Part shown: in pieces, positions 10,146 to 64,000 of the stretch | Layout: each line of letters begins with the position of its first letter | Position numbering within the stretch: the stretch's first letter is position 1 | Origin: Mobula birostris | Lineage: Eukaryota | NCBI RefSeq assembly: GCF_030028105.1 | Contig: NC_092383.1 | Location: 96,805,604 to 96,869,603 of the forward strand | Length of the DNA stretch: 64,000 nt | Reading direction: 5' to 3' | The notes under the pieces: model-generated | Database searches by the model: none | What the model was told of the DNA's origin: nothing | The model's input: the letters and a program-made list of their open reading frames with translations, nothing else | Translations under genes and position numbers: made by a program

Positions 10146-10303
10146 TCAGTCTGCCCCAAGGAGGGAGAGTGACCCGGAGTGGCCTCTTTCCAGGGGTAAC
10201 GTGTCTGTCATTACCCTGTCATTCCCCTTGGGGGGCTGCCAGACGCTGTGATTCTTCTTCACCCACTGAAGATCTGTGTAAATGATGCCCGTCTCCGCTT
10301 GGT
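10146..10303 (-). CDS. Gene A exon 5, cytoplasmic tail with ITIM IIYTDL and stop
   Basis: Acceptor ctttctgtcccacAG, then DQAETGIIYTDLQWVKKN...LLGAD*. Exons sum to 951 nt = 316 aa plus stop. Further downstream splicing cannot be excluded. Confidence 0.8.
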
Positions 10304-10461
10304 CTGTGGGACAGAAAGGAGAGGTGACAGGATCTGTACTGAAACCATTCCCCACTTTATCTGAGCCCTCTCTCCCACCCCTGTTGTCACCCCCCTGCCC
10401 ATCCCCTCTCTCTCCCTCCCCCAAATACCAGACTCAACAACAGGGTGTCAGATCCACTCGC

Positions 10462-10596
10462 CTTCAGTCCCTGAAGTTACTTCCCTTCCCTCAGGTCTTC
10501 TCCTCCGTGTGACCATGAGAATCACAGTGAGAGCAAAGATCAGGACGATTCCCACCACTGACAGTACAATCTTCAGGATCACTGCATCTGGCACTG
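10462..10596 (-). CDS. Gene A exon 4, transmembrane plus juxtamembrane segment
   Basis: PVPDAVILKIVLSVVGIVLIFALTVILMVTRRRRPEGREVTSGTE. Polypyrimidine acceptor ttacAG. The donor is non-canonical, AAG|GCGAGT. Confidence 0.88.
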
Positions 10597-11253
10597 CTGT
10601 AACAGAGAGTAGAAGAGGTTTCCTGATGAATCCAGTCCTCATGCTCCCAGTGACACAGGATCGATGAATTCACTCCATCCCTCCTCAGTCGGAGAAAACT
10701 CCCTGTCACCTCAACACGGTCCCTCAGTACCCTACAATCACCATCACATAGCTCCCCTCCAAACCCCACCTCTCCACCCCGCTCCTCTCCCTTCCAACAT
10801 CCCTCAGTCCCTCCACCCCATTCCCTCCAATATCCCTCAGTCCCCTGAGTCCTCATTCTGTCCGATCACCATCACCTCACTGTCCTCCACCCCACCCCTC
10901 CCTTCCAATACCCTTCAATCCCTCCATCCCCATTCCCTCCAATCACCATCAAATCACTCACTTCCAAACCCATCACTTCCCCTCTGATACCTCTCAGTCC
11001 CCTCATCCCCCATTCCCTCTAATCAACATTACATCACTGACCCGCACCCCTCCCCTCCAATACTCCTCAGTCCCCTCATCCCCTATTTCCTCCAGTAACG
11101 ATCACAACACTCCGCTCCAACCCCTCCTACTCCATGGTGCTCCCAGTGGGACACAAAAGAAGAATACTGTTGACAGACACATTTGGAAATGTTTGTGGCA
11201 GGAATTAAGAAAATGGAGGAGGAATCAAAACTGTAATTGCCCATCTTCTCAAA

Positions 11254-11895
11254 CATAGAAACATAGAAAACCTACAGCACAATACAGACCCTTCGGCCCA
11301 CAAAGTTGTGCCGAACATGCCCTTACCTTAGAACTACCAAGACTTACCCATAGCCCTCTATTTTTCTGAGCTCCATGTACCTATCCAGGAGTCTCTTAAA
11401 TGACCCTGTCATATCCGCCTCCAGCACCATCACCGGCAGCCCATTCCACACACTCACCACTCTCTGCGTAAAAAAACTTACCCCTGACATCTCCTCTGTA
11501 CCTACTTCCAAGCACCTTAAAACCGTGCCCTCTTGTGTTAGCCATCTCAGCCCTGGAGGAAAGCCTCTGACTATCCACACGATCAATGCCTGTCATCATC
11601 TTATACACCTCTATCAGGTCACCTCTCATCCTCCGTCACTCCAAGGAGAAAAGGCCGAGTTCACTCAACCTATTCTCTTAAGACATGCTCCCCAATCCAG
11701 GCAACATCCTTGTAAATCTCCTCTGCACCCTTTCTATAGTTTCCACATCCTTCCTGTAGTGAGGTGACCAGAACTGAGCACAGTACTCCAAGTGGGGTCT
11801 GACCAGGGTCCTCTATAGCTGCAACACTTCCTCTCAGCTCTTGAACTCAATCCCATGGTTGAAGAAGGCTAATGTACCATATGCCTTCTCAACAA
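11254..11895 (-). mobile_element. CR1-LINE 3' fragment in gene A intron 3
   Basis: RGDLIEVYKMMTGIDRVDSQRL..FKRLLDRYMELRKIEGYG. Absent in unit 2. Confidence 0.9.
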
Positions 11896-12224
11896 CTCCA
11901 GTCTGTATGTATTCTGTCTGACAGGATACTGTAGAGGACCGTTAACTTTGTAGGTAACCTTCGTTTTTGGATTTTATACTCAGGCCTCCGATCTTATTTG
12001 TCAGCACAGCCTGGGTGAGGAACTGCAGTACATTTTGCAGAAGGTCCACACTGAATCAACTGTGCACTGTTGCTGGAGGGAGGGAGTGATTCGATTGGAG
12101 GGAAGGATTATTTAGGATGGTTGAGATACCGAGTGGTCAGGGAGGTGAAGGCTGAGCTCGAGGAGAGGGGTTACTGAGGGCCAATGTGAGGGAGCTGGAT
12201 TAAAATCAGTGGAGATACACTTAG

Positions 12225-12790
12225 TTAGATCCCACTTGGAGTACTGGGCTCAGTTCTGGTCGCCTCACTCACTACAGGAAGGATGTGGAAACCATAGAAA
12301 GGGTGCAGAGGAGATTTACGAGGATGTTGCCTGGATTGGGGAGCATGCCTTATGAGAATAGGTTGAGTGAACTTGGCCTTTTTTCCTTGGAGTGACGGAG
12401 GATGAGAGGTGACCTGATAGAGGTGTATAAGATGATGAGGGGCATTGATCGTGTGGATAGTCAGAGGCTTTTTTGAAGGACTGAAATGGCTGCCACAAAG
12501 GGACATCGTTTAAGGTGCTTGGAAGTAGGTACAAGGGGGTGTTAGAGGTAAGTGTTCAGACAGAAAGTGGTGGGTGCATGGAACTGCCAGCAATGGTGGT
12601 AGAGGTGAATACAGTAGGGTCTCTTAAGAGATTGTTCGATAGGTGCATGGAGCTTAGAAAAATCGAGGGCTATGCTGTAGGGAATTTCGAGGCAGTTTCT
12701 AGAGTAGGTACATGGTCAGCACAACATTGTGAGTCAAAAGGTCTGTAATCTGCTGTAAATTTTTTATGTTTTTATGAAGCTGTTCTATGC
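12225..12790 (+). mobile_element. CR1-LINE 3' fragment, inverted relative to 11254-11895
   Basis: cccacttggagtactgggctcagttctgg..RCMELRKIEGY. Absent in unit 2. Confidence 0.9.
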
Positions 12791-12856
12791 TGTCCCGTTT
12801 TACACTCCTGGGACAGGAGATCTAACTAAATTGCAACATCTTCGTCGGACACTCAC

Positions 12857-13138
12857 GACATGTGTCCAGATTACAGACGTCCCCCAGCCAGACCTGTGCG
12901 GTGTCCTCACTGATGGGGTTTCTGGCCTCACACCTGTACACAACATCCTCCATCTCTGCTGTGCAATCAACCCGTATCGTCTTTCCGTCTTTCCAGATGT
13001 GATGGCTGCTGTTGTCTCCTGTAACTTCTCTCCACCAACTAAAGTTGGTGGGGTTGCCAGAGGTCACGGAGCAGGTCAGGGCGACGATACAGATTCCAGT
13101 GATGTTCTGAACAGTGATGTTTACTCCTGGCACGGGCT
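12857..13138 (-). CDS. Gene A exon 3, IgC2 domain
   Basis: EPVPGVNITVQNITGICIVALTCSVTSGNP...VDC...YRCEARNPISEDTAQV...VC, the SLAM-type two-disulfide Cys pattern. AG/GT boundaries, 282 nt, phase 1-1. Confidence 0.93.
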
Positions 13139-13749
13139 CTGAGGGTGTGAGAGAGAGATGAAAGATGAGTAAAGGAGATTCTTGAAAACAGCTCAATCCC
13201 CAACTCCCTGGTTCCATCCCCAACAGTCCAGAGTAAACTTCAAGCCAATCCCACCTCATTTTTACCCAACGATCCCTCACCCTTTTGTTCAGTCACTTGT
13301 TGCTGGAGGAAGTTCCCACGTGCTGAGCCCCCTTTCCCAAACACAACCCACAAACGCAATCGACAAACTCTCCATCATGTCCTGTTTATAGCACTCTATT
13401 CCAGGAATTCTCTCTATTCCCATGTCTTTTGTTCCTCCTGTGTGTGGTCCCGGCATCCCTTCGAAACCTGAGTGAGCTCAAGCCCTGACCTGCCCTAATC
13501 TGGTCCAACACAAGACACAGCCCACTCTATTCTGTCAGTCTCTCAATCTCCACTTTGCCTGCCCAGATTACGATGATGTCTTGAGATCCTGAAACCTGTG
13601 CCATTTCTTACGTCTCTGTTCTCACACCCTCTCCCACCGAAAGCAAGGAGAAGATTCCTCTGACCCTTTCCTTCTACCCCACTGGTCTCCACCTTCAGTG
13701 CATCAACATCTATGCTTCCTGGCCCTTTCAATGGGACTCCATTGAATCA

Positions 13750-14330
13750 TAGAGCATTCCAGTGCAAAAACCGGCTCTTCAGTCCATCTAGTCCATACCT
13801 AGTCCCATTGATACACATCTGGATATTGCCTTCCACATCCCTTTCAGTTCTTATCCAAATTTCTGTTGGACATTGAAATCGAACCTGGTTCCAACCCTTC
13901 CACCTGCACCTTGTTCCACCCTCTGAGTGAAGAAGTTTCCCCCACCTTCACCTATAACTCAGGTCCTCGAGTCCTGATACTCTGCACTCTTTCAATCTAA
14001 TTGATACCTTTCCTGTACGTAGGTGACCAGAATTGCACAAATACTGCAAATTAGGCCTCTCCAAGGTCTTATACAATTTCCACATAATATCCCAACTCCT
14101 GTACTCAATAATTTGATTTATGAAGGCCAATGTGCCAAAAGCTTTTTTTAATGACCCTATCGACCTGAGACACCACTTTCAAGAATTTATGGTTCTGTAT
14201 TCCCAGATCTCTCTATTCTACCGCACTCTTCAGTGCCCGACTGCTCATCATGTACGTTCCACGCTGGTTTACTTCCCAAAGGTCAAGGCTTCGTACTCGT
14301 CTGCATGAAATTCAACCTGACAATCTTTGG
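13750..14330 (-). mobile_element. Old CR1 fragment shared with ~38000-38560
   Basis: AFINQIIEYRSWDIMWKLYKTLERPNL. Confidence 0.7.
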
Positions 14331-14559
14331 CTCATTATTCCTGCTAGTTCCAATCCTGCTACAGGCTTTCATTGTCTTCTTCACTGTCCAATATACCCAC
14401 AACTACTGTCATCCGCAAATTTGATGATCCACTTACATTCCACTCCCTTCCCTCTTTCTTACATATTTTGACCAGTTTCTTCCTGAGTAACACCTCTGTC
14501 TGCCCTTCTGCCAAACCCACAACTCCCACCACTCCACGTCCCACTCCACTTTCTGGACA

Positions 14560-14760
14560 TCCAGAGGAGGGGGGCTTCATATGAACTTTCACAGTTTCCC
14601 TTCCCTCCATGCAGGGAACCAAAAGCTGAAACAGAGATTGAGGTGCACTCCCAATGCAGTGAATTGCACTCAGTGTCCACACGGTGGCCTCCTCTCCACT
14701 GAGAAACCAGGCACAGTGTCACTGACCACCTTGAGGGACATCTCAGTTCAGGCACAATTG
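14560..14760 (+). mobile_element. Old Penelope-like GIY-YIG fragment
   Basis: Degenerate match to the YCIRCS.CGLLYIGET-type region. Absent from unit 2. Confidence 0.4.
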
Positions 14761-16561: not shown

Positions 16562-16882
16562 CGTACACCTCCAGTCGCACTGTTGTTTTATATTCATTTC
16601 CTGAACTTGCTGCTGTGCAAATCACCTCATAATCACCGGAGTCCTCTCTCCGTAGATCATGGATTTCCAGACTGACGTTCCCAGGATGAAAGGTTATCCT
16701 GTTCTTGTACTGCTCATTACTGAAGTAGCTGATGTTCTCTTTCGAGTACTTCACAATCTTGATTCTGGGCGATACCCGAATCCAATGAACCTCAAAGTCT
16801 GGACTGACTGGGATCCCAAAAAGTAAGGAGACTGACTGTCCCTGAGCTCCGGTCACAGTGGTGGGAGGAGTCCCAGTCCCAG
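16562..16882 (-). CDS. Gene A exon 2, IgV domain (CD2/SLAM type, no B-F disulfide)
   Basis: SGTGTPPTTVTGAQGQSVSL...EVHWIRV...YKNRITFHPGNVSLEIHDLRREDSGDYEV...VRLEVY. Acceptor ctcctcAG, donor G|GTGAGT, 321 nt, phase 1-1. Confidence 0.93.
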
Positions 16883-21386: not shown

Positions 21387-21441
21387 AGAGTGAGGCGCAG
21401 AGAGTTAGCCAGCAGGAGATCAGCAGATGCCTGGTGTTCAT
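21387..21441 (-). CDS. CD2/SLAM-like gene A exon 1, signal peptide MNTRHLLISCWLTLCASL
   Basis: ATG, 18 codons of hydrophobic leader, then strong phase-1 donor T|GTAAGT. Conserved in unit 2 and in frame with the IgV exon. Confidence 0.85.
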
Positions 21442-28175: not shown

Positions 28176-28486
28176 ACATGTTTGACATAAGGTGAAGCTC
28201 CATCTATGCTGTCCCATCATATTACCAATGCATGGGTTAAGCTGTGTGATGAACTTCTTCCATCGCTCCATGATTCCAGAAGTGGTGTATGCTGGAGCCT
28301 CTCACAGATTCTCCTCCCCTTCACCACCTGAAGCTGGTGGGACGCCCAAGGTCAAGGAGCAGATCCAGCTGAGGTCAAAGGTCTCGGTAATGTTCAGAAC
28401 CATGAGCAACACACACAAGATGCTGTAGGATCTCGAAGGTGTCTATGAAAATGAATAAACCATGATGTATCTTCCTGACACGGGGT
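28176..28486 (-). pseudogene. Degenerate SLAM-type IgC2 pseudo-exon (unit 1)
   Basis: Acceptor cctcAG|ACCCCGTGTCAGGA matches the real exon 3 start. Frames give VLNIT..FDLSWICSLTLG.P / TSFSW / IHHFWNHGAM with stops and frameshifts. The upstream intron (28500-29260) matches 13150-13520. Confidence 0.75.
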
Positions 28487-33558: not shown

Positions 33559-35866
33559 GAAAAATTTACAAACCTCCATGTCTATTCTGCTGCCCTATTG
33601 TAGATCTCCATCAGTGTCTTTGGATCTCTCCTACATCCATATCGAAAATCATTAATGTACGTTCAAAATTCAAAGTAAATTTATTATCAATTTACATATA
33701 TGTCACCGTATACAAACATGAGATTAATTCTCTTGAGGGCACACACAGTAAATCCAAGAAACACAATTGAATCAAAGAAACATCGCATCCAACGCACACA
33801 AATAGTGTCCAGCAACAACCCCTATTGGTCAAAACTGGCCATAGGCTTCCAAACACAAAAGCAACAGCCCACTATCACTCTCTGCCTCCTATTACCAAGC
33901 TCACTTTGTAATTAATGTACCAACTTGCTTGGATCCTAGGAGTTTAAACATTTGGACATGCCTTCCACATCCTAGTGAGGTGTAGAAAGCTCGAATGGTC
34001 ATGTGGGTGTATGAGATCACTGGACCAGATCCTGCACAACATGGTCGCTCCCCGTCTATGCTGTATTCCTGCATCGTTTATATTAAATCCCTGTCTCTCG
34101 TTCTCCTCACTTTCCAACAACTCCCTCTCCCTTAAACCCGAGACACATCCATATACTGGGAATCTTGGTCAACACACACTCCATGCTGGAGAAACTCAGC
34201 AGTTCAGGCAGCAGGCAGCCGATTCGTTGACTATTATTCTCCTGCAGAGATGCTGTCTGACGTGCTGAATACTTCCAGCACGTTGTGTGTGTTGTTGCTC
34301 CCTTACACCTTTCCATTTTTCTCCCTCCCTTAAATCCCTGTTCTCCACTGAGTCCCACCTCATAAACATTCCTCATAAATCCAATACCACCCTGAAATCT
34401 TCTCCCCTCCGCCCTCTTCCATCCCTTCCTGATTTCTGGCAGAAGGTTGACAGATTCTCTTGGATCCCCATCTTTCCCCAGTGATAATTCCGCACCCTCG
34501 GTGTGAACCAGTGTTTGAGAACTATTCACTCCAGATGGGAGAGTGGTGAGCATTTGGAAACTGGGCACAGGCTCACATTATTCATTTAATTATTAACTAC
34601 TGTTTGAGTAGCATTAATCAAGGTGATAATCTACAGGGGAACATTCTGACAAAATCTCTTCCACCAGACAAAACTGGAGAGTATTTTTGAACTAACATTC
34701 AACACTTACAAAGCACAGCAGCAAAGAGCAGCCATGCTGTTGTCCCATAGACCTCACCCCTCACTACGACAGTGGGACACAGAGGAAACCTGCATCTCCA
34801 AGCCACCGTCCCACATTCAGATCTCCCTGAGAGTCCGCACCCTCCTTGTGCTGGTGCTGAGGGAGGGACGATCCATCCTAGGCTACAGGATACTGTCCAG
34901 GGGTTCTGTCCTCAGCCCATCCATGGGGGGTCTGGCATGTTGCATCACTGCAGCATACTCAGTGGGATTAGTCTCGGCAACGACCTCCGGACCAGCAAAC
35001 TACAAAAGAAACAGAACCTGTCAGCTCTGGGCGATTTAAGGGAAACAGGGACAGGACACACTGTGTCAGGAATTCTTGGAGACTGGGAAACACAGACAGG
35101 GAAATAGAGTCCAGGACCCATTCAGGGAGATAGAGACCAGAACACAGAGACAGGACCTGGAGACAGCACACAGAGACAAGGAGATACAGACCAGGACCGT
35201 GGGACAGGGAGATACAGATGAGGACACAGAGGCATGGAGATTTAGACAAGGACACAGAAGCAAGGAGATACAGACCAGGACCGGGAGACAAGACACAGAC
35301 AGGGAGATATAGACCAGGACCTAGTAACAGGACATGGAGACTGGAGACAGAGACAAGGACTCTGGAGAGGGGAGACATTGAGACTGGGCACATCGACACG
35401 TGACACATGGACACAAAAGACCTGGACATGCAAAGCGACACACAATGATGGAAACTCAGATCACCCAGTCAGCACCAATCAACTGACAAACAATCATACT
35501 GACCCGGCATCAACACGGTCACACTCTCAGTGCATTCGGAATGAACTCACACACCGCCCATCGACACAAATATTAACACCACGACTGATCATCAGAAATG
35601 CACATACTACTGGGCATAACCTCATGTACAGCGACAGGGTAACCCAGTGACTGGGAGTGTGGGGACAGGGTACCCCAGTGACTGGGAGTGTGGGGACAGG
35701 GTAACCCAGTGACTGGGAGTGTGGGGACAGGGTACCCCAGTGACTGGGAGTGTGGGGACAGGGTAACCCAGTGACTGGGAGAATGAGGGATTGCGTACTC
35801 TGGTGACAGGATGTATGAGACAGGGATCCACAGTGACTGGGTGTGTGGGTACTGTACCCCAGTGAC

Positions 35867-35870
<4 letters not shown>

Positions 35871-35914
<44 letters not shown>
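35871..35914. repeat. (TG)22 microsatellite, unit 2 only
   Basis: Direct read. Confidence 0.95.
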
Positions 35915-35916
<2 letters not shown>

Positions 35917-36300
35917 GCAGTGTATCCTAGTGATTGGATGTGTGGGATATTGTACCCCAGTGACTGGGTGTGTGTGGGACAGTGAACCCCAGTGCTATGT
36001 GTGTGGGGAACAGTGTACCCCAGTGACTGGGAGTATGCGGGACATGAACCTCAGTAACCGGATTTGTGGGGGACAGTGCACTCAGTGACTGTGCGGAGAG
36101 TACAATTGCTGTTAGATCTGCCTGACCAGGCCTGGAGATCACTGAGGCAAAGTTTCAATTGACTCCTCAGTGGTACGTGGGATCTTGCTGTGCCTCCGTG
36201 TGTGCGCTGCTGAGTCCCGCAGTGGTGGTTGGAACGATCTCTGGTGATGGGGACCTGTGGTTGATCCTGGGATTGTGCAGATTACATGTAGGCCTTATGT

Positions 36301-36458
36301 TCAGTCTGCCCCGAGGAGGGTGAGTGACCAGGAGTGGCCTCTTCCCAGGGGTAATGTGTCTGTCATTACCCTGTCATTCCCCTTGGGGGGCTGCCAGACA
36401 CTGCGATTCTTCTGCATCCTCTGAAGATCTGTGTAAATGATGCCTGTCTCCGCTTGGT
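36301..36458 (-). CDS. Gene B exon 5, cytoplasmic tail with ITIM IIYTDL
   Basis: DQAETGIIYTDLQRMQKN...LLGAD*. Total CDS 951 nt, in frame. Confidence 0.8.
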
Positions 36459-36616: not shown

Positions 36617-36748
36617 CTTCAGTCCCTGAAGTTACTTCCCTTTCCTCAGGTCTTCTCCTCCATGTGAGAGCAAAGATCAGGAGTGTCCCCACCGCTGACA
36701 GTACGATCACCAGGGTCACTGCATCTCCTGCTGCTCTTGTGTTAGGTG
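36617..36748 (-). CDS. Gene B exon 4, stalk plus transmembrane segment
   Basis: PPNTRAAGDAVTLVIVLSAVGTLLIFALTWRRRPEEREVTSGTE. Acceptor cattatAG, donor AAG|GCAAGT, 132 nt. Not in the ORF track; translated by hand. Confidence 0.85.
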
Positions 36749-37150: not shown

Positions 37151-37435
37151 GACGTGTGTCCAGATTACAGACGTCCCCCAGCCGGACCTGTGCGGTGTCC
37201 TCATTGATGGGGTTGCTGGCCTCACACCTGTACACAACATCCTCCATCTCTGCTGTGCAATCAACCTGTATCATCTTTCCGTCTTTCCAGATGTGATGGC
37301 TGCTGTTGTCTCCTGTAACTTCTCCTCTCCACCAATTGAATCTGGAGGGGTTGCCAGAGGTCATGGAGCAGGTCAGGGTGAGGTTACAAGTCCCAGTGAT
37401 GTTCTGAACTGTGATGTTTGCTCCTGACACGGGCT
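37151..37435 (-). CDS. Gene B exon 3, IgC2 domain
   Basis: EPVSGANITVQNITGTCNLTLTCSMTSGNP...YRCEASNPINEDTAQVRLGDVC. 285 nt, phase 1-1. Confidence 0.93.
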
Positions 37436-38797: not shown

Positions 38798-41700
38798 TGT
38801 CAATACCTCCAGTTGAACTGTCTTTTTGTGTGTTTCCCCCTAGCCGTCAGTCTGTGGTTTTGTATTTCCATGTGCTCTTGTTTGTTTTCATGCCTCATGT
38901 GTTCCTGTCCCCGCTCCTGCTCTACCTGGCCCCGGTATTACTGAGTACTCCGTCTCTCACCTGTTTCTCATTATTACCTGTATTGCTGCCCCCTGTGTCT
39001 CATTGTGCTCCACCTATCATCTGCCTCTCTGTTTATTGCTCAGTGTATTTCAGTCCTGTGTTTTCACCTGTTTATGGCCAGATTGTGCCAATGAATTTTC
39101 CTGAGCCTTTCCAGCATTTGTATCTGTACTCTGTCTGTCTGAATATCAACTCTGCCTGTTTGCTGATTCTGGTTTTTGGATTTCTCTGGAACTTCTGATC
39201 AATGCATGAACTTTGACACTGACCTTGTTTGCACCTTGGGATTTGTAACTCAATAATATCACTGTGTGCACAGTACTGGGTCTGTGATTGGATCCCTGCT
39301 CCAGTGTCCCGACAGTACAATCTGGACAGAATGGAACCAACAGACCCTGGTTGTCTGAGAGCTGCCCTGGAACAATTGGGAGTGATGCTGGTGAGACCCC
39401 AGAACCAGCTGGAGTCGGTGTTCAGGGCAGCGGAGTCGGTTTCTGCTGATGTAGCCCCCCTTGTGGCCCAGGCTCAGTCACTCCAGCTGCCCCAGAGCAT
39501 CCATCAACATTCTGTCACTGCATCTTCTACCCCACCCTCTGTGTCCCCGCGTGCTCCTCCTGTCCAAAAGCCCTGTCTGCCTCCTCCAGAAAGGTACTCA
39601 GGTGAGCCCGGTACCTGTCGCTCTTTACTTTCCCAGTGCACCCTCATTTTTGAATTACAACCAACAACATTTCTGACTGATCGAGCCAAGGTAGCCTACA
39701 TCATCACCCAACTGTCTGGTTGGGCGAGAGAATGGAGAACAGCTGTCTGGGAGGCAGGTTCCCCTTTCTGCTATAGTTTTCAGTTATTTTCTGAGGAGAT
39801 GAGAAAAAGTGTTTGATTACTCCAAATATGGGAGAGACACTGCCCATGAAATGCTGCACATGCATCAGGGGTGCAGATCTGTGTCAGATTACGCCATAGA
39901 GTTCCACCTCCAGTGGCTGGAACTCGGAGGCACAGTACGACACCTTCCTGAACGGCCTCTCCGAAGACATCAAAGATGAGCTGGTCACCCAGGAGCTTCC
40001 TGTGACCTTTGAAGCCCTGGCGAATTTGGCCATCCGTATTGATGTTCGCTTTCAGCAGCGCTGCAGAGCGAGGGGTTCCAAGCTCCTCGTCAGTCTACGT
40101 TACCCTGCTGTTTGACCTCATCTACAATTCCCGTACCAGAGCCCGAGGCTCTGCACGTTGACTGTACCCGCCTGAGGCCGACTGAAAGACAAAGGAGAAT
40201 CAGCACCCGCTCCTGTCTGTACTGTGGCCAACCAGGACATTTCATCTCCACCTCATCTCCATTGAATCTCCATTTCATCTCCAAGTGCTCACCAGTAGGA
40301 TGAGGAGTATTGGTGAGCGTGACCCCTGTCTGGCCCTCCTTGATGCCACTCACTCTCATACCTGCTTCTCTGGAGTGGGACACCCAACAGCGAGCAGTCT
40401 CCATCCTGGTCAACTCTGGTGTGGAGGGGTGTTTTATCGATTCTGGGTTGGCTGCCCAGTGGGGATTATCCACATCTGCTCTCCAGTCACCATTGATGAA
40501 CAATGCCTTGAACGGTCAGAGACCGGCTGATATCACCCATGTCACGGCCCCAGTGAGTCTCAGTTTATCTGGCAACCATCATGAACAGTTAACCCTTTAT
40601 GTTATTGACTCCTCAAACTCCTATTGTCCTGGACATCCCTGGTTAGTTAAACACAACCCCCACATTGACTGTCCCAGTCACAGGTTTGTAGGCTGGAGCC
40701 CATTCTGTCACTCCCACTGTCTCCGCCATGCTCAGATCCCCTTGTCTCCAAGCCCAGATCCCCCTCGAGGAATTCCGGACCTTAATGCCATCCCTCCTCA
40801 AGGCTGTATTCAGCAAGTCCCGGGCACTTCCCTGCCGCCTCATCGTCCATATGATTGTGCCACTGACCCCTTGCCTGACACATCTTCCCCAAGGGGAGCC
40901 TGTATTCCCTGTCTGTACCTGAAACAGAAGCCATGAATAAGTACATTCAACAGTCCCTGGCTGCAGGCATCATCCAGCCGTCTTCCTCCCCTGCTGGTGC
41001 CGGTTTGTTCTTTCTTGAAAAGAAGGACGGCTCCTTGCGTCCATGCATTGATTACCGGGGACTGAATGAAGTCACTGTTAAGAACCGTTTCCCTCTTCCA
41101 CTCATGACCTCGGTGTTTGAACTACTGCAAGGAGACTCAGTTTTCACCAAGCTTGATCTCCGTAACGCCGACCATCTTGTCCGCATGCGCAAAGTGGACA
41201 AGTGGAAGAGAGCCTTCAACACCACCTCAGGCCATTACGAGTATCTGGTTATGCCATTTGGTCTCACCAATGCCCTGGCCGTCTTCCAAGCCCTGGTAAA
41301 TGACGTTCTCAGGGACGTGCTGAACCAATTTGTTTTTGTGTATCTCGACAACATTTTGATTTATTTTCTAAGGCCCTTGCTGAGCACACAGGTCATGTCC
41401 ACAGTGTTTTCCAGCCCCTTCTGGAGAATCAGATCTTTGTGAAGGCTGAGAAATGTGAGCTTCATCGCAATACAGTCTCCTTTCTGGGGTATGTAATTCC
41501 AGGCGGTTCCATTCAGATGGACCAACAGAAGGTCAAGGCAGTGGTCAAAAGGCCTCCATCTTTGACTTGTCAGGAGTTGCAACGCTTCTTGATTTTGGTA
41601 ACTTCTATTGCCGCTTCATCAGAAATTACAGTACACTGGCTGTATCCCTCACTGCTTTACGTCATTGCCTGTCAGATTACCTGATCCCCTGCTGCTGAAA

Positions 41701-42998
41701 AAGCATTCTCTGACCTGAATGAATGTTTCTCCTCTGCCCCCATCCTGATTCAACACGAAACCAACTGGCAGTTCATTCTGGAGGTGGACACATCTGACAT
41801 TGGTGTAGGAGTTGTTCTCTCTCAGCGTTCGGCCAAGGATGAGAAGGTACACCTCTGCACATTCTTCTCTCACCGCTTCACTCCCACCGAGCGGAATTAC
41901 GATGTTGGAAACCGGGAACTGCTGGCTGTGAAGCTCGCTCTGGAGGAGTGGAGGCATTGGCTGGAGGGAGCCAAGGTGCCATTCTTAGTCTGGACTGATC
42001 ACAAGAATCTGGAATATATCCATATGGCCAAGCACCTCAACTCCCGTCAAACTTGTTGGTCCCAGTTTTTCTCAAGATTCAATTTTACTCTGTCCTTCTG
42101 CCCCGATTCCAAGGATGGAAAACCTGATGCCCTCTCCTGAAGATTTCCTTCCACTAAGACCCCTGAGGTACCTGATGTCATCCTCCCTGCTCACTGTCTC
42201 ATGGGTGCAGTGCAAAGGGACATTGAATCCATTGTGTAAGTTGCTCAACAGATCAAGGCAGCCCCTAGTCAATGCCCCACTAATCGTGTTGATGTTCCCA
42301 GCTCTGTCCGCTCACAGGTATTGCAGTGGGGTCATTGATCCCAGTTATCCTGTCACCCTGGAACCAAGCGTACTCAGGCCTTCATCAGTCGGCGGTTTGT
42401 ATGGATTCCACCCACAGACCAACGGCCAGACCGAGTGGGCAAACCAACAGCTGGAGACTGTATTGCGGTGCCTGGCCTCCCAGAACCCCTCCACGTGGAG
42501 TCAGCAGCTACCCTGGGACGAGTACGCCATAAACTCTCATCCGTCCTCTTCCACTGGTCTGTCCCCCTTCGAGTGCTGCCTTGGCTAGCAACCTCCACTG
42601 TTTCCTGCCCAGGAGGAGGAGGTTGGCGTTCCATCTGCCGAGGCATTCATCCGCTGTTGTCAGTGGACATGGAGGCACACTCGCTCTGCCCTTCTCCGTG
42701 CCTCCGCTAGGATCAAGCGTCAAGCTGACCGCCATCGCTGCAAGGCCCCACGTTACCATGAGGGACAGCGTATGTGGCTTTCAACCCGAGACCTGCCCCT
42801 CCAGGTGGATTCCTGAAAGTTCACCCCCCTGTAACATCCTGGACCTCTCTCTCATCACCCCACCTGTAACATCCTGGACCTCTCTCTCATCAGGGACTTT
42901 TGACGTCAGCACCCAGCTCTACCTGTTGTGATGCCAGGAGGTGTATGTAGAGGTGAGGGAACTGTCAGTACCTCCAATTGAACTGTGTATTTGTGTGT
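38798..42998 (+). mobile_element. Degenerate Ty3/Gypsy (Sushi-like) LTR retrotransposon, unit 2 only
   Basis: 5' LTR TGT...ACA at 38798-39314. gag from 39331 (PPERYSGEPGTCR..AKVAYIITQLSG; knuckle CLYCGQPGH), protease LVNSG, RT VYLDNIL, RNase [15 protein letters not shown], integrase HPQTNGQTE. Many frameshifts. Purine tract, then a 36-bp 3' LTR stub at 42963. Confidence 0.92.
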
Positions 42999-44183: not shown

Positions 44184-44504
44184 CATACACCTCCAGTCGC
44201 ACTGTTGTTTTATTTCCAGCTCCTGAACTTGCAGCTGTAAAAATCAGCTCATAATCACCAGAATCCTCTCTCCGTAGATTATGGATTTCCAGACTGACGT
44301 TCCCAGGATGAAAGGTTATCCTGTTCTTGTACCGCTCATTACTGTAGTAGCTGATGTTCCCATTCGAGTACTTCACAATCCTGATTCTGGGCGATACCCG
44401 AATCCAATGAACCTCATCGTCCGGTCTGACTGGGATCCCAGAAGGTAAGGAGACTGAGTGTCCCTGAGTTCCGGTCACAGTGGTAGAGGGAGCCCCAGTC
44501 CCAG
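44184..44504 (-). CDS. Gene B exon 2, IgV domain
   Basis: SGTGAPSTTVTGTQGHSVSLPSGIPVRPDDEVHW...REDSGDYELIF...VRLEVY. No Cys, 321 nt, AG/GT intact. Confidence 0.93.
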
Positions 44505-49517: not shown

Positions 49518-49572
49518 AGAGTGAGGCACAGAGAGTTAGCCAGCAGGAGATCAGCCGTTGCCTGGTGTTCAT
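49518..49572 (-). CDS. CD2/SLAM-like gene B exon 1, signal peptide MNTRQRLISCWLTLCASL
   Basis: Paralog of 21387-21441 with the GTAAGT donor intact. Confidence 0.85.
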
Positions 49573-55842: not shown

Positions 55843-56162
55843 ACATGTTTGACATAAAGTGAAGCTCCATCTATACTGTCCGATCACATTGTCAATGCAT
55901 GGGTTAAGCTGTGTGATGAACTTCTTCCATCGCTCCATGATTCCAGAAGTGGTGTATGCTGGCATCTCTCACAGATTCTCCTCCCCTTCACCAGCTGAAG
56001 CTGGTGGGATGCCCAAGGTCAAGGAGCAGATCCAGCTGAGGTCAAAGGTCTTGGTAATGTTCAGAACCATGAGAAACACGCACAAACTACTGTAGGATCT
56101 CAGCATGTCAGGCAGTCTCCATGAAAATGAATAAACCATGATGTATCTTTCTGACACGGGGT
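55843..56162 (-). pseudogene. Degenerate IgC2 pseudo-exon (unit 2)
   Basis: Paralog of 28176-28486. ORF 55969-56157 shows VLNITKTFDLSWICSLTLGIP. Confidence 0.75.
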
Positions 56163-59100: not shown

Positions 59101-61790
59101 CCCATCATATCCATGATCACCATCCAACACCTGATCGCACTCGACATATTTACCTGTGTAATGTCCAGGCTAAGGCCCTATTTTATTTTATTTCTACTGC
59201 TATGATGTGATATATTTTAATTTTAGTAGTTCTTCTGCGATTGTCAAAGTTGTGGTATCTGCTGAAACCAAATCATATCGACCTTAGTCGTATGAAACTT
59301 ACTGAGGGTGGCTTTCTCACCGTTACCCATGCAAAGCTGAGTCACGTAGTTATTAGCCAGAGTTAGTTAACCAGCCAAGTTTGTTACAAGTCACAGTGAG
59401 AGGGTTCCATTTTTGGGGGCTCTTCCGGGATTGGAATGCTGTATGAATGCTGTGTAAGGATTGATTAAGCTGCTTAATTGTCTGTCTAGGGCAGTGCTTT
59501 TTGGTGTGAGATATTTTATTATGGATGCCAAAGAGATTAAGGTCAGGAGCAATGCGATACCAGTGATGTAACTGAAGTCACGCTGACCGATAGAATAGGG
59601 GTACCTAGAAAGGCAGGCCCTGGCCAGTTCATATCTTTAGACATAGAGGATGAATATTTTAATGGCAAGATGCTCTATTTTCTGCGAAGTGAGTTGAAGA
59701 TTTTGTCTGATATGAAAAGTGTAATAGGTCATTCAGCTGTTAATTTACCTTTGTAAGTTCTGAGCTGGTTTTGGCTCTTACATCACTGGTTGCTCAACAC
59801 TAAAGTGTACTTGTGAAGAGCCAAAGTTATTGTAGGCTGAGAATGTTCCCTGTAGTCAAACCCACACCCGAGAGGTAAAGTTACAGCTATATAGGGCCCT
59901 GGTCAGACCCCACTTGGAGTACTGGGCTCAGTTCTGGACACTTCACTACAGGAAGGATGTGGAGACTACAGAAAAGGTGCAGAGGAGATTTACAAGGATG
60001 TTGTCTGGATTGGGGAGCATGCCTTATGAGAATAGGTTGAGTGAACATGGCTCTTTCTCCTTGGACTGACGGAGGATGAGAGGTGACCTGAAAGAGGTAT
60101 ATAAGATGATAAGAGGCTTTGATCGTGTGGATAATCAGAGGCTTTTTCCCAGGGATGAAATGGCTAACACGAGAGAACACAGTTTTAAGGTCCTTGGAAG
60201 TAGGTACAGAGGAGATGTCAGGGGTAAGTTTTTTACGCACAGAGCGGTGAGTGCGTGGAATGGGCTGCCGGCGATGGTGGTGGAGCTGGATACAATAGGG
60301 TCTTTTAAGAGGCTCCTGGATAGGTACATGGAGCTCAGAAAAATAGAGGGCTATGGGTAACCCTAGATAATTTCTAAATTAAGGATATGTTTGGCACAGC
60401 ATTGTGGGCTGAAGGGCCTGTATTGTGTTGCAGATTTTCTATGTTTCAATGGTTCTATGAAAAATTTACAAACCTCCATGTCTATTCTGCTGCCCTATTG
60501 TAGATCTCCATCAGTGTCTTTGGATCTCTCCTACATCCATATCGAAAATCATTAATGTACGTTCAAAATTCAAAGTAAATTTATTATCAATGTACATATA
60601 TGTCACCGTATAGAAACATGAGATTAATTCTCTTGAGGGCACACACAGTAAATCTAAGAAACACAATAGAATCAATGAAACATCGCATCCAACGCACACA
60701 AATAGTGTCCAGCAACAACCCCTATTGGTCAAAACTGGCCATAGGCTTCCAAACACAAAAGCAACAGCCCACTATCACTCTCTGCCTCCTATTACCAAGC
60801 TCACTTTGTAATTAATGTACCAACTTGCTTGGATCCTAGGAGTTTAAACATTTAGACATGCCTTCCACATCCTAGTGAGGTGTAGAGAGCTCGAATGGTC
60901 ATGTGGCAGTATGAGATCACTGGCCCAGATCCTGCACAACATAGTCGCTCCCCGTCTATGCTGTATTCCTGCATCGTTTATATTAAATCCCTGTCTCTCG
61001 TTCTCCTCACTTTCCAACAACTCCCTCTCCCTTAAACCCGAGACACATCCATATACTGGGAATCTTGCGCAACACACTCTCCATGCTGGAGGAACTCAGC
61101 AGTTCAGGCAGCAGGCAGCCGAATTGTTGACTATTATTCTCCTGCAGAGATGCTGTCTGACGTGCTGAGTTCTTCCAGCACTTTGTGTGTGTTGTTGCTC
61201 CCTTAAACCTTTCCATTTTCCTCCGTCCCTTAAATCCCTGTTCTCCACTGAGTCCCACCTCATAAACATTCCTCATAAATCCAATACCAGTCTGAAATCT
61301 TCTCCCCTCCGCCCTCTTCCTTCCCTTCCTGATTTCTGGCAGAAGGTTGACAGAGTCTCTTGGATCCCCATCTTTCCCCAGTGATAATTCCGCACCCTCG
61401 GTGTGAACCAGTGTTTGACAGTTGATCACTCAAGATGGGAGAGTGGTGAGCATTTGGAAACTGGGCACAGGCTCACATTATTCATTTAATTATTGACTAC
61501 TGTTTGAGTAAGATTAATCAAGGTGATAATCTACAGGGGAACATTCTGACAAAATCTCTTCCACCAGATAAAACTGGAGACTATTTTTGAACTAACATTC
61601 AACACTTACAAAGCACAGCAGCAAAGAGCAGCCATGCTTTTGTCCCATAGACCTCACCCCTCACTACGACAGTGGGACACAGAGGAAACCTGCATCTCCA
61701 AGCCACCGTTCCACATGCAGATCTCCCTGAGAGTCCGTATCCTCCGTGTGCCAGTGCCGAGGGAGGGACGATCCATCCTAGGCTACAGGA

Positions 61791-62408
61791 ACACGAGGAG
61801 ATCTGCAGATGCTGGAATTTCAAGCAACACATATAAAAGTTGCTGGTGAACGCAGCAGGCCAGGCAGCATCTCTAGGAAGAGGTACAGTCGACATTTCGG
61901 GCCGAGATCCTTCGTCAGGACTAACTGAAAGTAGAGCTAGTAAGAGATTTGAAAGTGGGAGGGGGAGGGGGAGATCCAAAATGATAGGAAAAGACAGGAG
62001 GGGGAGGGATGGAGCCAAGAGCTGGACAGGTGATTGGCAAAGGGGGTATGAGAGGATCATGGAACAGGAGGCCTAGGGAGAAAGAAAGGGGGAGAGGTGA
62101 AGCCCAGAGGATGGACAAGGGGTATAGTGAGAGGGATAGAGGGAGAAAAAGGAGAGAGAGAAAAAGAATATGTATATATATATATAATAAATAATGGACG
62201 GGGTACGAGGGGGAGGAGGGGCATTAACGGAAGTTTGAGAAATCAATGCTCATGCCATCAGGTTGGAGGCTACCCAGACGGAATATAAGGTGTTGTTCCT
62301 CCAACCTGAGTGTGGCTTCATCTTGACAGTACAGGAGGCCGTGGATAGACGTATCAGAATGGGAATGGGATGTGCAATTAAAATGTGTGGCCACTGGGAG
62401 ATCCTGCC
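61791..62408 (-). mobile_element. Penelope-like element fragment (GIY-YIG C-terminus), unit 3 only
   Basis: ORF 62224-62472 PVATHFN...LEEQHLIFRLGSLQPDGMSIDFSNF. 6-bp TSD acagga. Empty sites near 8766 and 34885. Confidence 0.82.
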
Positions 62409-63722
62409 ACAGGATACTGTCCAGGGGTTCTGTCCTCAGCCCATCCATGGGGGGTCTGGCATGGTGCATCACTGCAGCATACTCAGTGGGATTAGTCTCC
62501 GCAACGACCTCCGGACCAGCAAACTACAAAAGAAACAGAACCTGTCAGCTCTGGCCGATTTAAGGGAAACAGGGACAGGACACACTGTGTCAGGAATTCT
62601 TGGAGACTGGGAAACATAGCCAGGGAAATAGAGTCCAGGACCCATTCAGGGAGATAGAGACCAGAACACAGAGACAGGACCTGGAGACAGCACACAGAAA
62701 CAAGGAGATACAGACTGGGAGCCGTAGACAGGACATCGAGATAGGAAGATACAGACCAGGACCCTGGGACAGGGAGATACAGATGAGGACACAGAGGCAT
62801 GGAGATTTAGACAAGGACACGGAAGCAAGGAGATACAGACCAGGACCGGGAGACAAGACACAGAGACAGGGAGATATAGATCAGGACCTAGTGACAGGAC
62901 ATGGAGACTGGATACAGAGATAAGGACTCTGGAGAGGGGAGACATTGAGACTGGGCACATCGACACGTGACACATGGACACAAAAGACCTGGACATGCAA
63001 AGCGACACACAATGATGGAAACTCAGATCACACAGTCAGCACCAATCAACTGACAAACAATCATACTGACCCAGCATCAACACGGTCTCACTCTCAGTGC
63101 ATTCGGAATGAACTCACTAACTGCCCATCGACACAAATATTAAATCCGCGACTAATCATCGGAAATGTACACACTGGGTGGACCGGGTGTGTGGCGGCAG
63201 AGTACCTCAGTCACTGGATGTGTGTGATGGACAGTGTACCCTAGTGACTGTGTGTGTGAGGGACAGTGTTCCCCAGTGACTGTGTGTGGGGTGACAGTGT
63301 ACCCCAGTAACCGGATGTGTGAGGGACAGTGAACCCCAGTGACTGTGTGTGGGGTGACAGTGTACCCCAGTAACCGGGTGTGTGAGGGACAGTGAACCCC
63401 AGTGACTGGGTGTGGGGTGTCAGTGTGCCCCAGTAACCGGGTGTGTGAGGGACAGTGAACCCCAGTGACTGTGTGTGGGGTGACAGTGTACCCCAGTAAC
63501 CGGATGTGTGGGGACAGTGCACTCAGTGACTGTGCGGTGTGTACAATCCAGGCCTGGAGATCACTGAGGCAAAGTTTCAATTGACTCCTCAGTGGTATGT
63601 GGGATCTTGCTGTGCCCCCGTGTGTGCGCTGCTGAGTTCCGCAGTGGTGGTTGGAATGATCTCCGGTGACGGGGACCTGTGGTTGATCCTGGGATTGTGC
63701 AGATTACATGTAGGCCTTATGT

Positions 63723-63880
63723 TCAGTCTGCCCCAAGGAGGGAGAGTGACCCGGAGTGACCTCTTTCCAGGGGTAACGTGTCTGTCATTACCCTGTCATT
63801 CCCCTTGGGGGGCTGCCAGACACTGTGATTCTTCTGCATTCTCTGAAGATTTGTGTAAATGATGCCTGTCTCCGCTTGGT
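63723..63880 (-). CDS. Gene C last exon (ITIM IIYTNL); the rest of the gene lies beyond the window
   Basis: DQAETGIIYTNLQRMQKNHSVW...LLGAD*, with the same acceptor as genes A and B. Confidence 0.78.
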
Positions 63881-64000
63881 CTGTGGGACAGAAAGGAGAG
63901 GTGACAGGATCTGTACTGAAACCATTCCCCACTTTATCTGAGCCCTCTCTCCCACCCCTGTTGTCACCTCCCTGCCCAGCCCCTCTCCCTCCCTCCCCCA

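What the first reader, a model, noticed from the sequence alone, without database searches (positions are those of the whole stretch)
10146..64000. Expanding tandem family of ITIM-bearing CD2/SLAM-like receptors in a probable cartilaginous fish
Seen: at least three head-to-tail copies, two fully intact (316 aa), with architecture leader-IgV(no disulfide)-IgC2(CxxxLxC...YxC...C)-TM-tail. Known: this is the CD2/SLAM ectodomain signature, and mammalian SLAMs signal through TxYxx(V/I) ITSMs. Here the single tyrosine motif is IxYxxL (ITIM), not an ITSM. Inference: a lineage-specific inhibitory receptor cluster evolving by birth-and-death, possibly SAP-independent. Orthology to any named SLAMF gene cannot be assigned from this sequence.
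Basis: partly seen in the sequence, partly recalled or inferred. Interest (0 to 1): 0.72.

Follow-up and report, generated by a model that had tools for sequence, protein, structure and literature searches.

The report
Manta ray SLAM-like receptor gene cluster
Three tandem copies of a CD2/SLAM-type immune receptor gene from the giant manta ray are real and expressed, but the main transcript has a sixth exon that adds a classical SLAM switch motif, so these are not the ITIM-only receptors proposed, and the genes are already in the public annotation.

Summary
The minus strand carries three head-to-tail copies of one gene.

The gene model is incomplete, however. RNA contigs matching copy 1 without a mismatch splice from a donor inside exon 5 to a sixth exon 1.3 kb downstream. 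That exon encodes a canonical ITSM, TEYAAV. The main product is 332 aa and identical to Mobula birostris XP_072135114.1 ("CD48 antigen-like isoform X1"). Its tail carries an ITIM-like IIYTDL and, 36 residues later, the ITSM.

CD2/SLAM affiliation is supported by fold search, profile searches, the cysteine pattern and ITSM-rich tails in relatives. No orthology to a named SLAMF gene can be assigned.

The family is much larger than three copies. The genome holds at least 45 V exons, 38 of them within 1.9 Mb of this chromosome. That chromosome is not the one carrying the COPA-NCSTN-PEX19 block. Seven paralogs share the IIYT(D/N)L motif, which also occurs in other stingrays.

Notes on the adjacent window by the scan's first readers already touch copy 3.

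Verdict: a new member of a known kind, of modest interest.

The parts
21387..21441 (-). Copy 1 exon 1 (coding part): start codon and 18 residues of the signal peptide, phase-1 GT donor
   Evidence: Found by a leader-motif scan. Donor GTAAGT. The resulting protein is identical to XP_072135114.1.
16562..16882 (-). Copy 1 exon 2: V-set Ig domain lacking the canonical B-F disulfide
   Evidence: Pfam V-set 1.1e-12. Best PDB sequence match is CD48. Splice sites.
12857..13138 (-). Copy 1 exon 3: C2-set Ig domain with the CxxxLxC...YxC...C pattern
   Evidence: The pattern aligns to SLAMF6 chain 2if7. RNA contigs cover it with 0 mismatches.
10462..10596 (-). Copy 1 exon 4: stalk, TM segment (with one Lys) and juxtamembrane RRRR. 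It ends in a GC donor, with an in-frame stop 4 codons into the intron.
   Evidence: RNA joints 12857|10596 (GT..AG) and 10462|10303 (GC..AG) in runs X1-X3. DNA.
10215..10303 (-). Copy 1 exon 5 as spliced in the main mRNA: ITIM-like IIYTDL, ending at the internal donor AGG|GTAATG
   Evidence: RNA joint 10215|8880 in X1, X2 and X3. Sequence.
10146..10214 (-).
   Evidence: The only support is one X1 contig (9845-10244) at depth 40, against about 300 for the spliced form.
8764..8880 (-). Copy 1 exon 6 coding part: 38 residues with the canonical ITSM TEYAAV, then the stop. The 3' UTR runs on below 8600.
   Evidence: RNA contigs chain exons 3-4-5-6 (records 17 and 22).
49518..49572 (-). Copy 2 exon 1 (leader)
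44184..44504 (-). Copy 2 exon 2 (V-set domain, no cysteine at all)
   Evidence: Pfam Receptor_2B4 scores 23.8 bits, above its 21-bit cut-off.
37151..37435 (-). Copy 2 exon 3 (C2-set domain)
36617..36748 (-). Copy 2 exon 4 (TM segment, uncharged and 6 residues shorter; GC donor GCAAGT)
36301..36458 (-). Copy 2 exon 5 (IIYTDL). The internal donor follows 36370; the read-through stop is at 36301.
34883..34999 (-). Copy 2 exon 6 (TEYAAV, stop)
   Evidence: Matches XP_072133947.1.
63723..63880 (-). Copy 3 exon 5 (IIYTNL). The internal donor follows 63792. The upstream exons lie beyond the window end.
62224..62523 (-). Copy 3 exon 6 reading frame: TEYAAV is present, the stop of copies 1 and 2 is lost, and the frame runs 62 codons further into repeat-derived sequence
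   Evidence: Pfam finds nothing in the extension.
28240..28410 (-). Relic C2 exon of a dead family member, with an in-frame stop, in the spacer after copy 1
   Evidence: tblastn with family proteins, E 1e-11
55907..56080 (-). The same relic C2 exon in the next repeat unit
39229..42588 (+). Degraded Ty3/gypsy-type retroelement inside intron 2 of copy 2, antisense to the gene. It accounts for the longer intron.
   Evidence: Pfam DUF4939 (gag-like), Asp_protease_2, RVT_1 and RT_RNaseH

Best explanation
The window holds three tandem paralogs of a type I membrane receptor of the CD2/SLAM branch of the Ig superfamily, from the giant manta ray Mobula birostris. Public annotation already lists them as 'CD48 antigen-like' or 'SLAM family member 7-like'.

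Each gene has six coding exons: leader, V-set domain, C2-set domain, TM, tail 1 and tail 2. The main mRNA of copy 1 encodes 332 aa. Its cytoplasmic tail carries a membrane-proximal ITIM-type motif (IIYTDL, Tyr273) and a distal canonical ITSM (TEYAAV, Tyr309), 36 residues apart.

Shown: the exon chain, the GC-AG intron 4, the exon 5 to exon 6 splice, expression, the fold class and the family size.

Inferred: the V domain binds a ligand on another cell, either itself or a family member. Src-family kinases then phosphorylate both tyrosines. The pair recruits tandem-SH2 phosphatases (SHP-1/SHP-2), as ITIM-ITSM and ITIM-ITIM pairs do in SIRP-alpha, PD-1 or CD244. The distal ITSM keeps the capacity to bind SAP/EAT-2-type adaptors. 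The receptor would therefore be biased toward inhibition but still switchable, not SAP-independent.

The proximal motif is a derived ITSM. Sister genes have TVYANI or TVYADI at the same position, sawfish has TVYADL and Hemitrygon has IVYADI.

The three copies belong to a subfamily of 7-8 genes, inside a cluster of at least 38 V exons that evolves by duplication, gene conversion and decay.
For: Gene models and splice signals. RNA contigs of three runs match copy 1 with 0 mismatches and chain exons 3-4-5-6, with joints 12857|10596, 10462|10303 (GC..AG) and 10215|8880. My six-exon protein is identical to XP_072135114.1, and copy 2 matches XP_072133947.1 apart from one acceptor choice. Exon 6 with TEYAAV is conserved in all three copies and in paralogs.

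CD2/SLAM affiliation. The AF2 model has Ig domains at pLDDT above 90. Its top Foldseek hits are CD48/CD2 (2dru), NTB-A/SLAMF6 (2if7), CD2 (1hng, 1hnf) and CD58 (1ccz), with TM-scores by target of 0.71-0.77; CEACAM1b ranks 32nd. The family profile matches SLAMF6 at 5.9e-17 in one stretch across both domains, including the cysteine pattern. The nearest non-elasmobranch proteins are Ly-9 (3e-44), SLAMF5-like (9e-28) and SLAMF6 (7e-19). Tails of relatives are rich in TxYxx(V/I) motifs.

Motif definitions, the failure of a motif without Thr at -2 to bind EAT-2, and tandem-SH2 binding of tyrosine pairs come from PMC3958483.

Family size and subfamily.
Against: No binding or signalling was measured, so every step after 'the protein exists' is inferred. 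The 36-residue spacing is longer than the 23-30 residues cited for tandem SH2 engagement in PMC3958483. The deep node joining the elasmobranch family to tetrapod SLAMF is weak (76/10), and profile E-values for CEA/CEACAM1 in PDB are close to those for SLAMF6 and CD2. The cluster does not lie at the conserved COPA-NCSTN-PEX19 block. dN/dS between copies 1 and 2 is about 0.9, so constraint is weak. The exon 5-6 splice was seen in RNA only for copy 1. Tissue and cell type of the RNA runs are unknown. Presence of SAP/EAT-2 genes in this genome was not tested.
Confidence: 0.75

Rival explanations
1. One reading: the main products are 316-aa receptors whose only tyrosine motif is an ITIM, so they signal purely through phosphatases and independently of SAP.
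For: The 316-aa frame is intact in copies 1 and 2. The 22-codon read-through extension stays open in all seven paralogs, and a sawfish model ends in a similar peptide (P0004). One paralog is annotated with this ending (P0215), and the spliced isoform of the same gene (P0162) lacks the ITSM. One X1 contig (9845-10244) runs unspliced across the internal donor at about 12% of the spliced depth.
Against: In three RNA runs the dominant contigs of copy 1 splice to exon 6; in X2 and X3 no contig matching copy 1 crosses the internal donor. Exon 6 with TEYAAV, its acceptor and the internal donor are conserved in all copies examined. The public models for copies 1 and 2 include exon 6.
Confidence: 0.1
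2. A paired-receptor switch. Retention of intron 4 (weak GC donor, in-frame stop four codons in) makes tail-less isoforms. In paralogs with Arg or Lys in the TM segment, these would pair with ITAM adaptors and activate, while the spliced form inhibits.
For: The GC donor is conserved in 4 of the 6 paralogs where this site could be read, and the stop just after it in 5 of them. TM segments carry K (copy 1), R and K (copy 3), R and E, or E in paralogs. Public models for copy 3 (XP_072133949.1) and for several paralogs and orthologs in three species end exactly at that stop.
Against: RNA contigs of copy 1 use the GC donor, and nothing covers 10400-10461. No indexed run held the intron 4 words of copy 3, though that test used only 10 words. 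The truncated public models may only reflect a gene predictor avoiding a GC donor. The alternative GT donor 19 nt upstream shows no joint. No adaptor association was tested.
Confidence: 0.15
3. The genes belong to the CEACAM family (or another V-C2 IgSF family such as HEPACAM), not to CD2/SLAM.
For: CEA and CEACAM1 score 1e-16 to 2e-16 against the family profile, close to SLAMF6 and CD2. CEACAM N domains also lack the disulfide, and CEACAM1 carries tyrosine inhibitory motifs (my own knowledge). A few relatives are auto-named CEACAM-like or HEPACAM2-like. The deep tree node is unresolved.
Against: Fold search ranks CD48, SLAMF6, CD2 and CD58 first and CEACAM1b only 32nd. The double-disulfide C2 pattern aligns with SLAMF6. 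Single V-C2 SLAMF5-like proteins score 9e-28 against 2e-17 or worse for CEACAMs. Amphibian CEACAMs form a separate clade (100/100), and a sawfish CEACAM3-like protein falls outside the family. Tails of relatives carry multiple TxYxx(V/I) motifs.
Confidence: 0.07
4. The copies are drifting toward pseudogenes and have no conserved function.
For: dN/dS is 0.90 overall (V 0.82, C2 1.19, TM 1.11) between copies 1 and 2. The unit contains relic exons. One paralog lost the exon 4 donor and another lacks the ITSM in its spliced isoform. Copy 3 lost its exon 6 stop.
Against: Copies 1 and 2 have intact frames, intact splice sites and conserved motifs. Copy 1 is expressed and correctly spliced. The same tail design (IIYTDL plus TEYAAV) is kept in Hypanus sabinus and Mobula hypostoma. 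The tail exons show the lowest dN.
Confidence: 0.05

Closest known systems
Mammalian SLAM family receptors (SLAMF3/Ly-9, SLAMF5/CD84, SLAMF6/NTB-A)
   Same: Leader, V domain without disulfide, C2 domain with two disulfides, TM segment, and a tail with TxYxx(V/I). The tail is split over several small exons. The genes sit in tandem arrays. These are the best fold and profile matches.
   Different: There is no one-to-one orthology: the elasmobranch genes form their own clade. The cluster is not next to COPA-NCSTN-PEX19. The proximal motif has Ile instead of Thr at -2 and Leu at +3, so it reads as an ITIM. The copy number is far higher, and some paralogs have charged TM residues.
CD48 / CD2 / CD58
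   Same: Top structural matches for the two-domain ectodomain (2dru, 1hng/1hnf, 1ccz). CD48 is the best single-sequence PDB hit for the V domain and gives the genes their automatic name.
   Different: By my own knowledge, CD48 and CD58 are GPI-anchored or short-tailed and carry no ITSM, and CD2 has a proline-rich tail. The manta genes have a TM segment and an ITIM plus ITSM tail, so 'CD48 antigen-like' is a misleading name.
ITIM-ITSM / ITIM-ITIM inhibitory receptors (SIRP-alpha, PD-1, CD244 ITSM pairs)
   Same: Two tyrosine motifs in tandem that could engage the two SH2 domains of SHP-2. The first SIRP-alpha pair quoted in PMC3958483 (ITYADL ... TEYASI) is very close to IIYTDL ... TEYAAV.
   Different: The ectodomain family is unrelated. 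The spacing is 36 residues, against 23-30. The resemblance is functional only, and no binding was tested.
CEACAM1-type receptors
   Same: N-terminal V domain without disulfide followed by C2 domains; paired activating and inhibitory members in a rapidly evolving tandem family (PMC2832619, found).
   Different: Lower fold rank (32nd), single-disulfide C2 domains, and a separate clade in the tree.

Membership tests
CD2/SLAM family (IgSF) | N-terminal V-set domain lacking the canonical B-F intrachain disulfide | tested here: met
   Pfam V-set 1e-12 and 2e-10. There is no B-strand Cys in either copy, and copy 2 has no Cys in the domain at all. No V-domain Cys is conserved across 26 relatives.
CD2/SLAM family (IgSF) | Membrane-proximal C2-set domain with a second disulfide (Cys before the B-strand Cys paired with a Cys after the G strand) | tested here: met
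   C142, C148, C195 and C214 are nearly invariant in the family. They align with the corresponding cysteines of SLAMF6 chain 2if7 in one HMM stretch. Disulfide pairing itself was not measured.
CD2/SLAM family (IgSF) | Two-domain ectodomain fold closest to solved CD2/CD48/SLAMF structures | tested here: met
   Foldseek against PDB: ranks 1-4, 6, 7, 9 and 10 are CD48/CD2, NTB-A, CD2 and CD58, with TM by target 0.71-0.77. CEACAM1b ranks 32nd at 0.68.
SLAM subfamily | Cytoplasmic ITSM, TxYxx(V/I) | tested here: met
   TEYAAV is in exon 6 of all three copies, and RNA shows it in the mRNA of copy 1. Relatives carry one to three ITSMs.
SLAM subfamily | Location in the conserved SLAM locus (next to COPA, NCSTN and PEX19, as on human 1q23; gene order from my own knowledge) | tested here: not met
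   COPA, NCSTN and PEX19 exons lie on C4 at 115.15-115.44 Mb, near other family V exons at C4 116.0-116.25 Mb. The window is on C18. Family membership by structure is unaffected, but positional orthology is not supported.
SLAM subfamily | Orthology to a named SLAMF gene | tested here: not met
   All sampled elasmobranch members form one clade (97/99), separate from the tetrapod SLAMF clade (100/99).
SLAM subfamily | Binding of SAP/EAT-2 to the phosphorylated ITSM; homophilic or intra-family ligand binding | not testable with these tools
   This needs biochemistry. A V-V homodimer prediction gave no verdict. SAP/EAT-2 genes were not searched for in this genome.
SLAM subfamily | Match to the curated Pfam models SLAM (PF06214) or Receptor_2B4 (PF11465) | tested here: inconclusive
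   The copy 2 V domain passes Receptor_2B4 (23.8 bits, cut-off 21). Copy 1 does not (16.5 bits). The SLAM model scores below its cut-off in both. 15 of 26 relatives hit Receptor_2B4 at E below 0.01.
ITIM-bearing inhibitory receptors (functional class) | (I/V/L/S)xYxx(L/V/I) in the cytoplasmic tail | tested here: met
   IIYTDL in copies 1 and 2 and IIYTNL in copy 3; all seven subfamily members have IIYT(D/N)L. Phosphatase recruitment was not tested.
CEACAM family | Closest sequence and fold relatives are CEACAM/PSG proteins | tested here: not met
   CEACAMs rank below SLAMF and CD2 in the fold search and in the large-database profile search, and form a separate clade. The PDB profile E-values are close, however.

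The most novel reading that the evidence does not exclude
Each gene may make three receptor forms by choices at two unusual splice sites. The forms would be ITIM plus ITSM (main form), ITIM-only (read-through of the internal donor in exon 5) and tail-less (retention of the GC-AG intron 4, which has a conserved stop four codons in). Several paralogs carry Lys or Arg in the TM segment. Their tail-less form could couple to ITAM adaptors. That would make this a paired inhibitory/activating receptor system built on a SLAM scaffold in rays, encoded by splicing rather than by separate genes.
Probability: 0.15. Interest if true: 0.6.

Novelty: new member of a known kind. Interest (0 to 1): 0.33.

Why it matters
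SLAM receptors tune lymphocyte and NK-cell activation through a tyrosine 'switch' motif. Little has been written about them outside mammals: my literature searches found only a passing mention of slamf genes in elasmobranch MHC maps (PMC10751288).

This locus shows three things about rays:
- They hold a very large, fast-evolving SLAM-like family on a chromosome other than the one carrying the COPA-NCSTN-PEX19 block that flanks the human SLAM locus.
- One subfamily has turned its first switch motif into an ITIM while keeping the second.
- The automatic names ('CD48 antigen-like') hide this.

That makes it a useful lead for comparative immunology of inhibitory signalling. It is not a new kind of system, and the headline claim of an ITIM-only, SAP-independent receptor does not hold for the main transcript.

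Tried and rejected
1. An ATG (MMGCLASS...) just upstream of the V exon was considered as the leader and rejected. No donor there fits the phase-1 acceptor and still leaves a usable signal peptide. The real leader lies 4.5 kb upstream.

2. The alternative GT donor 19 nt upstream of the GC donor of exon 4 shows no joint in any of four runs.

3. Intron 4 retention in copy 3: none of the 10 sampled words was held by any indexed run. This is a weak test.

4. The V-domain homodimer prediction (complex prediction) gave no verdict: score 0.19 against a mark of 0.32. It is not evidence either way.

The upstream exons of copy 3 and of four paralogs were therefore not read as DNA. Copy 3 is known from L001, L024 and XP_072133949.1.

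6. The look-up of encoding contigs for the Hypanus homologue returned no DNA.

7. MHC linkage: VPS52 lies on C6, not on C18. VANGL and CASQ lie on C7.

8. Positive selection: per-domain dN/dS is 0.7-1.2 with small counts, which gives no case for or against.

9. The 'Penelope GIY-YIG' label for the frame extension of copy 3 exon 6 could not be confirmed; Pfam finds nothing there.

10. One sequencing-run run failed because the server was busy.


Full report
**What is in the window**

A self-comparison of the 64-kb window shows a tandem unit of about 26.5-27.6 kb present three times: 7438-, 33559- and 60459-. The window has no N runs.

All family exons lie on the minus strand. Open frames with Ig-like translations are visible at 16.6, 12.9 and 10.2 kb, and again at 44.2, 37.2 and 36.4 kb.

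Reading the DNA at the exon borders and scanning for the leader peptide typical of relatives gave two complete five-exon models. Each has a 951-nt reading frame of exactly 316 aa.

Only the last two exons of the third copy are inside the window.

**The gene model is one exon short**

Relatives found in the large protein libraries have tails that continue past the point where the 316-aa model reads on into intron sequence.

A scan for TxYxx(V/I) on the minus strand found the same conserved frame about 1.3 kb downstream of exon 5 in all three units, with the Thr codon at 8844, 34963 and 62487. It is preceded by a good acceptor and encodes TEYAAV. Exon 5 contains an internal donor, AGG|GTAATG, in the right phase.

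Contigs of three public runs of one organism were laid on 8600-14599. They match copy 1 with 0 mismatches and are spliced, so the runs hold RNA. The joints are:
- 12857|10596 (GT..AG)
- 10462|10303 (GC..AG)
- 10215|8880 (GT..AG)

Two contigs of 1.2-1.3 kb chain exons 3-4-5-6 and run on into a 3' UTR.

The six-exon product is 332 aa. It is identical, residue for residue, to XP_072135114.1, "CD48 antigen-like isoform X1 [Mobula birostris]". Isoform X2 differs by a NAGNAG acceptor choice at exon 4.

Copy 2 equals XP_072133947.1 apart from one acceptor choice at the V exon. Copy 3 corresponds to XP_072133949.1.

The contig length reported for the window's chromosome (99,800,974 bp) is the same as that of the contig carrying these proteins. 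The window therefore comes from the giant manta ray assembly. This confirms 'cartilaginous fish'.

**Consequence for the interpretation**

The tail of the main product has two tyrosine motifs. IIYTDL (Tyr273) fits the ITIM pattern. TEYAAV (Tyr309) is a canonical ITSM. They lie 36 residues apart.

The 316-aa read-through form is not excluded as a minor isoform:
- In run X1 one contig (9845-10244) crosses the internal donor unspliced, at depth 40 against about 300 for the spliced form. Introns 3 and 4 have no cover.
- The 22-codon extension is open in all seven paralogs.
- One paralog is annotated with that ending, and the spliced isoform of that gene lacks the ITSM (P0215 and P0162).

**Family assignment**

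Single-sequence searches are weak but point the right way. CD48 is the best PDB hit for the V exon, and Receptor_2B4 passes its cut-off for copy 2.

A profile of 26 elasmobranch relatives matches SLAMF6 (2if7) at 5.9e-17 in a single stretch across both domains. That stretch includes CxxxLxC, YxC and the terminal Cys. CEA (1.1e-16) and CD2 (2.2e-16) are close behind.

An AlphaFold model of the copy 1 protein has Ig domains at pLDDT above 90. Its best structural matches are the CD48/CD2 chimera, NTB-A, CD2 and CD58 (TM by target 0.71-0.77). CEACAM1b ranks 32nd.

Against 5.8 billion proteins, the nearest non-elasmobranch hits to the profile are Ly-9 (3e-44), SLAMF5-like (9e-28) and SLAMF6 (7e-19). 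These come ahead of proteins named CEACAM or HEPACAM2.

Tails of relatives are full of TxYxx(V/I) motifs.

In a maximum-likelihood tree of V-C2 units:
- the elasmobranch proteins form one clade (97/99);
- tetrapod SLAMF forms another (100/99);
- amphibian CEACAMs form a third (100/100);
- the node joining the first two is weak (76/10).

So the proteins do not cluster with CEACAM. Membership of the CD2/SLAM branch rests mainly on fold, cysteine pattern and tail motifs.

**Size and place of the family**

The V exon finds at least 45 matches in the 4.0-Gb genome. Thirty-eight lie on this chromosome between 96.82 and 98.70 Mb, and the rest on C4 and C13. Copy 1 is the first gene of the cluster on the low-coordinate side.

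Exon 5 finds seven matches within 320 kb. All carry IIYT(D/N)L, and exon 6 with TEYAAV is present wherever the fetched DNA reaches it.

COPA, NCSTN and PEX19 flank the human SLAM locus (my own knowledge of 1q23). Here they lie together on C4 at 115.15-115.44 Mb, within 1 Mb of two other family V exons. VANGL and CASQ lie on C7, and VPS52 on C6.

The window's cluster is thus a secondary, expanded locus. It is not the positional counterpart of the mammalian SLAM locus.

Relatives from skates, sawfish, stingrays and mobulids sit on a mid-sized chromosome in each species (contig lengths). This suggests the secondary locus is old within batoids. That is an inference.

**Evolution of the motif and of the copies**

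At the proximal position:
- sister genes have TVYANI or TVYADI (ITSM);
- sawfish has TVYADL;
- Hemitrygon has IVYADI;
- Mobula and Hypanus have IIYTDL.

The ITIM-like motif is therefore a derived ITSM, shared by myliobatiform rays. It is not a peculiarity of these three copies.

Copies 1 and 2 differ by dS 0.087 and dN 0.079, giving dN/dS 0.90. The tail exons are the most constrained, but the counts are small.

The gene body of copy 3 is 91-94.5% identical to copy 1 but only 85-90% identical to copy 2. The spacers of units 1 and 2 are 94-96% identical. This mosaic fits unequal crossing-over and gene conversion.

Several features fit birth-and-death evolution:
- each unit holds a relic C2 exon with a stop;
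- copy 2 carries a degraded gypsy-type element in intron 2;
- copy 3 has lost the exon 6 stop;
- one paralog has lost the exon 4 donor, and the spliced isoform of another lacks the ITSM.

**How it most likely works**

Shown: expressed type I receptors with a SLAM-type ectodomain and an ITIM plus ITSM tail.

Inferred from established knowledge of such motifs (PMC3958483):
- ITSMs bind SAP/EAT-2 and, in competition, SHP-1, SHP-2 and SHIP.
- A motif without Thr at -2 (mouse CRACC ADYDTI) did not bind EAT-2.
- The SIRP-alpha pair ITYADL ... TEYASI is nearly the same as the pair found here.

I therefore expect the proximal motif to have lost adaptor binding and the pair to favour phosphatase recruitment. 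The distal ITSM would keep the receptor switchable. The 36-residue spacing is longer than the 23-30 cited, which is a caveat.

The ligand is unknown. A homodimer prediction gave no verdict.

**Open lead**

Exon 4 ends in a GC donor that RNA confirms. The GC donor is present in 4 of the 6 paralogs where this site could be read, and an in-frame stop lies four codons into the intron in 5 of them. Several public models, including that of copy 3, stop there.

TM segments of the subfamily carry K, R and K, R and E, or E. A splice switch between inhibitory and tail-less, adaptor-coupled forms is conceivable. Neither of my two tests supports it.

**Novelty**

The genes and their six-exon products are already in the public annotation under automatic names. 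My literature searches found no study of this family in cartilaginous fish beyond a mention of slamf genes in elasmobranch MHC maps.

I rate it a new member of a known kind, with modest interest.

Noticed in passing
window 10593-10596 (exon 4 acceptor of copy 1): Tandem CAGCAG (NAGNAG) acceptor. RNA contigs use 10596. Public isoform X2 uses the acceptor 3 nt downstream, which replaces Pro-Val by Leu.
   Followed up: partly
window 9466-9987, 35660-36030, 63180-63545: A tandem array with a period of about 31 bp inside intron 5 of every copy. It produces long spurious reading frames on the minus strand.
   Followed up: no
window 39229-42588 (+): Degraded Ty3/gypsy-type retroelement (gag-like, protease, RT and RNase H pieces in several frames) inserted antisense in intron 2 of copy 2. 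It is absent from copy 1.
   Followed up: partly
Pfam finds no domain there.
   Followed up: partly
window 28240-28410 and 55907-56080 (-): Relic C2-domain exons of a more distant family member, each with an in-frame stop. One sits in each spacer, at the same relative place.
   Followed up: partly
L024 (G000:C18:96867895-96870981), L026, L023: TM segments of subfamily members carry charged residues: R and K in copy 3, R and E in the gene at 97.136 Mb, and E in the gene at 96.984 Mb. All still have ITIM and ITSM exons downstream.
   Followed up: partly
L026 (G000:C18:97135139-97138225): In this paralog a deletion removes the exon 4 GC donor and the stop behind it. Only the upstream GT donor remains, and using it would shift the tail frame.
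   Followed up: no
G000:C4:115.15-116.25 Mb: COPA, NCSTN and PEX19 exons lie together, within 1 Mb of two family V exons. This is probably the positional counterpart of the mammalian SLAM locus.
   Followed up: partly
window 11200-12600 and 14000-14200: Very high RNA-contig depth (10^4-10^5) over repeat copies in introns 2 and 3 (a LINE-like fragment with copies at several places in the window). This reflects expressed repeats elsewhere in the genome, not this gene.
   Followed up: no
window 4072-4566 (-) and 730-1011 (-): Fragments of LINE-type reverse transcriptase with internal stops, downstream of copy 1, at the low-coordinate edge of the cluster.
   Followed up: no
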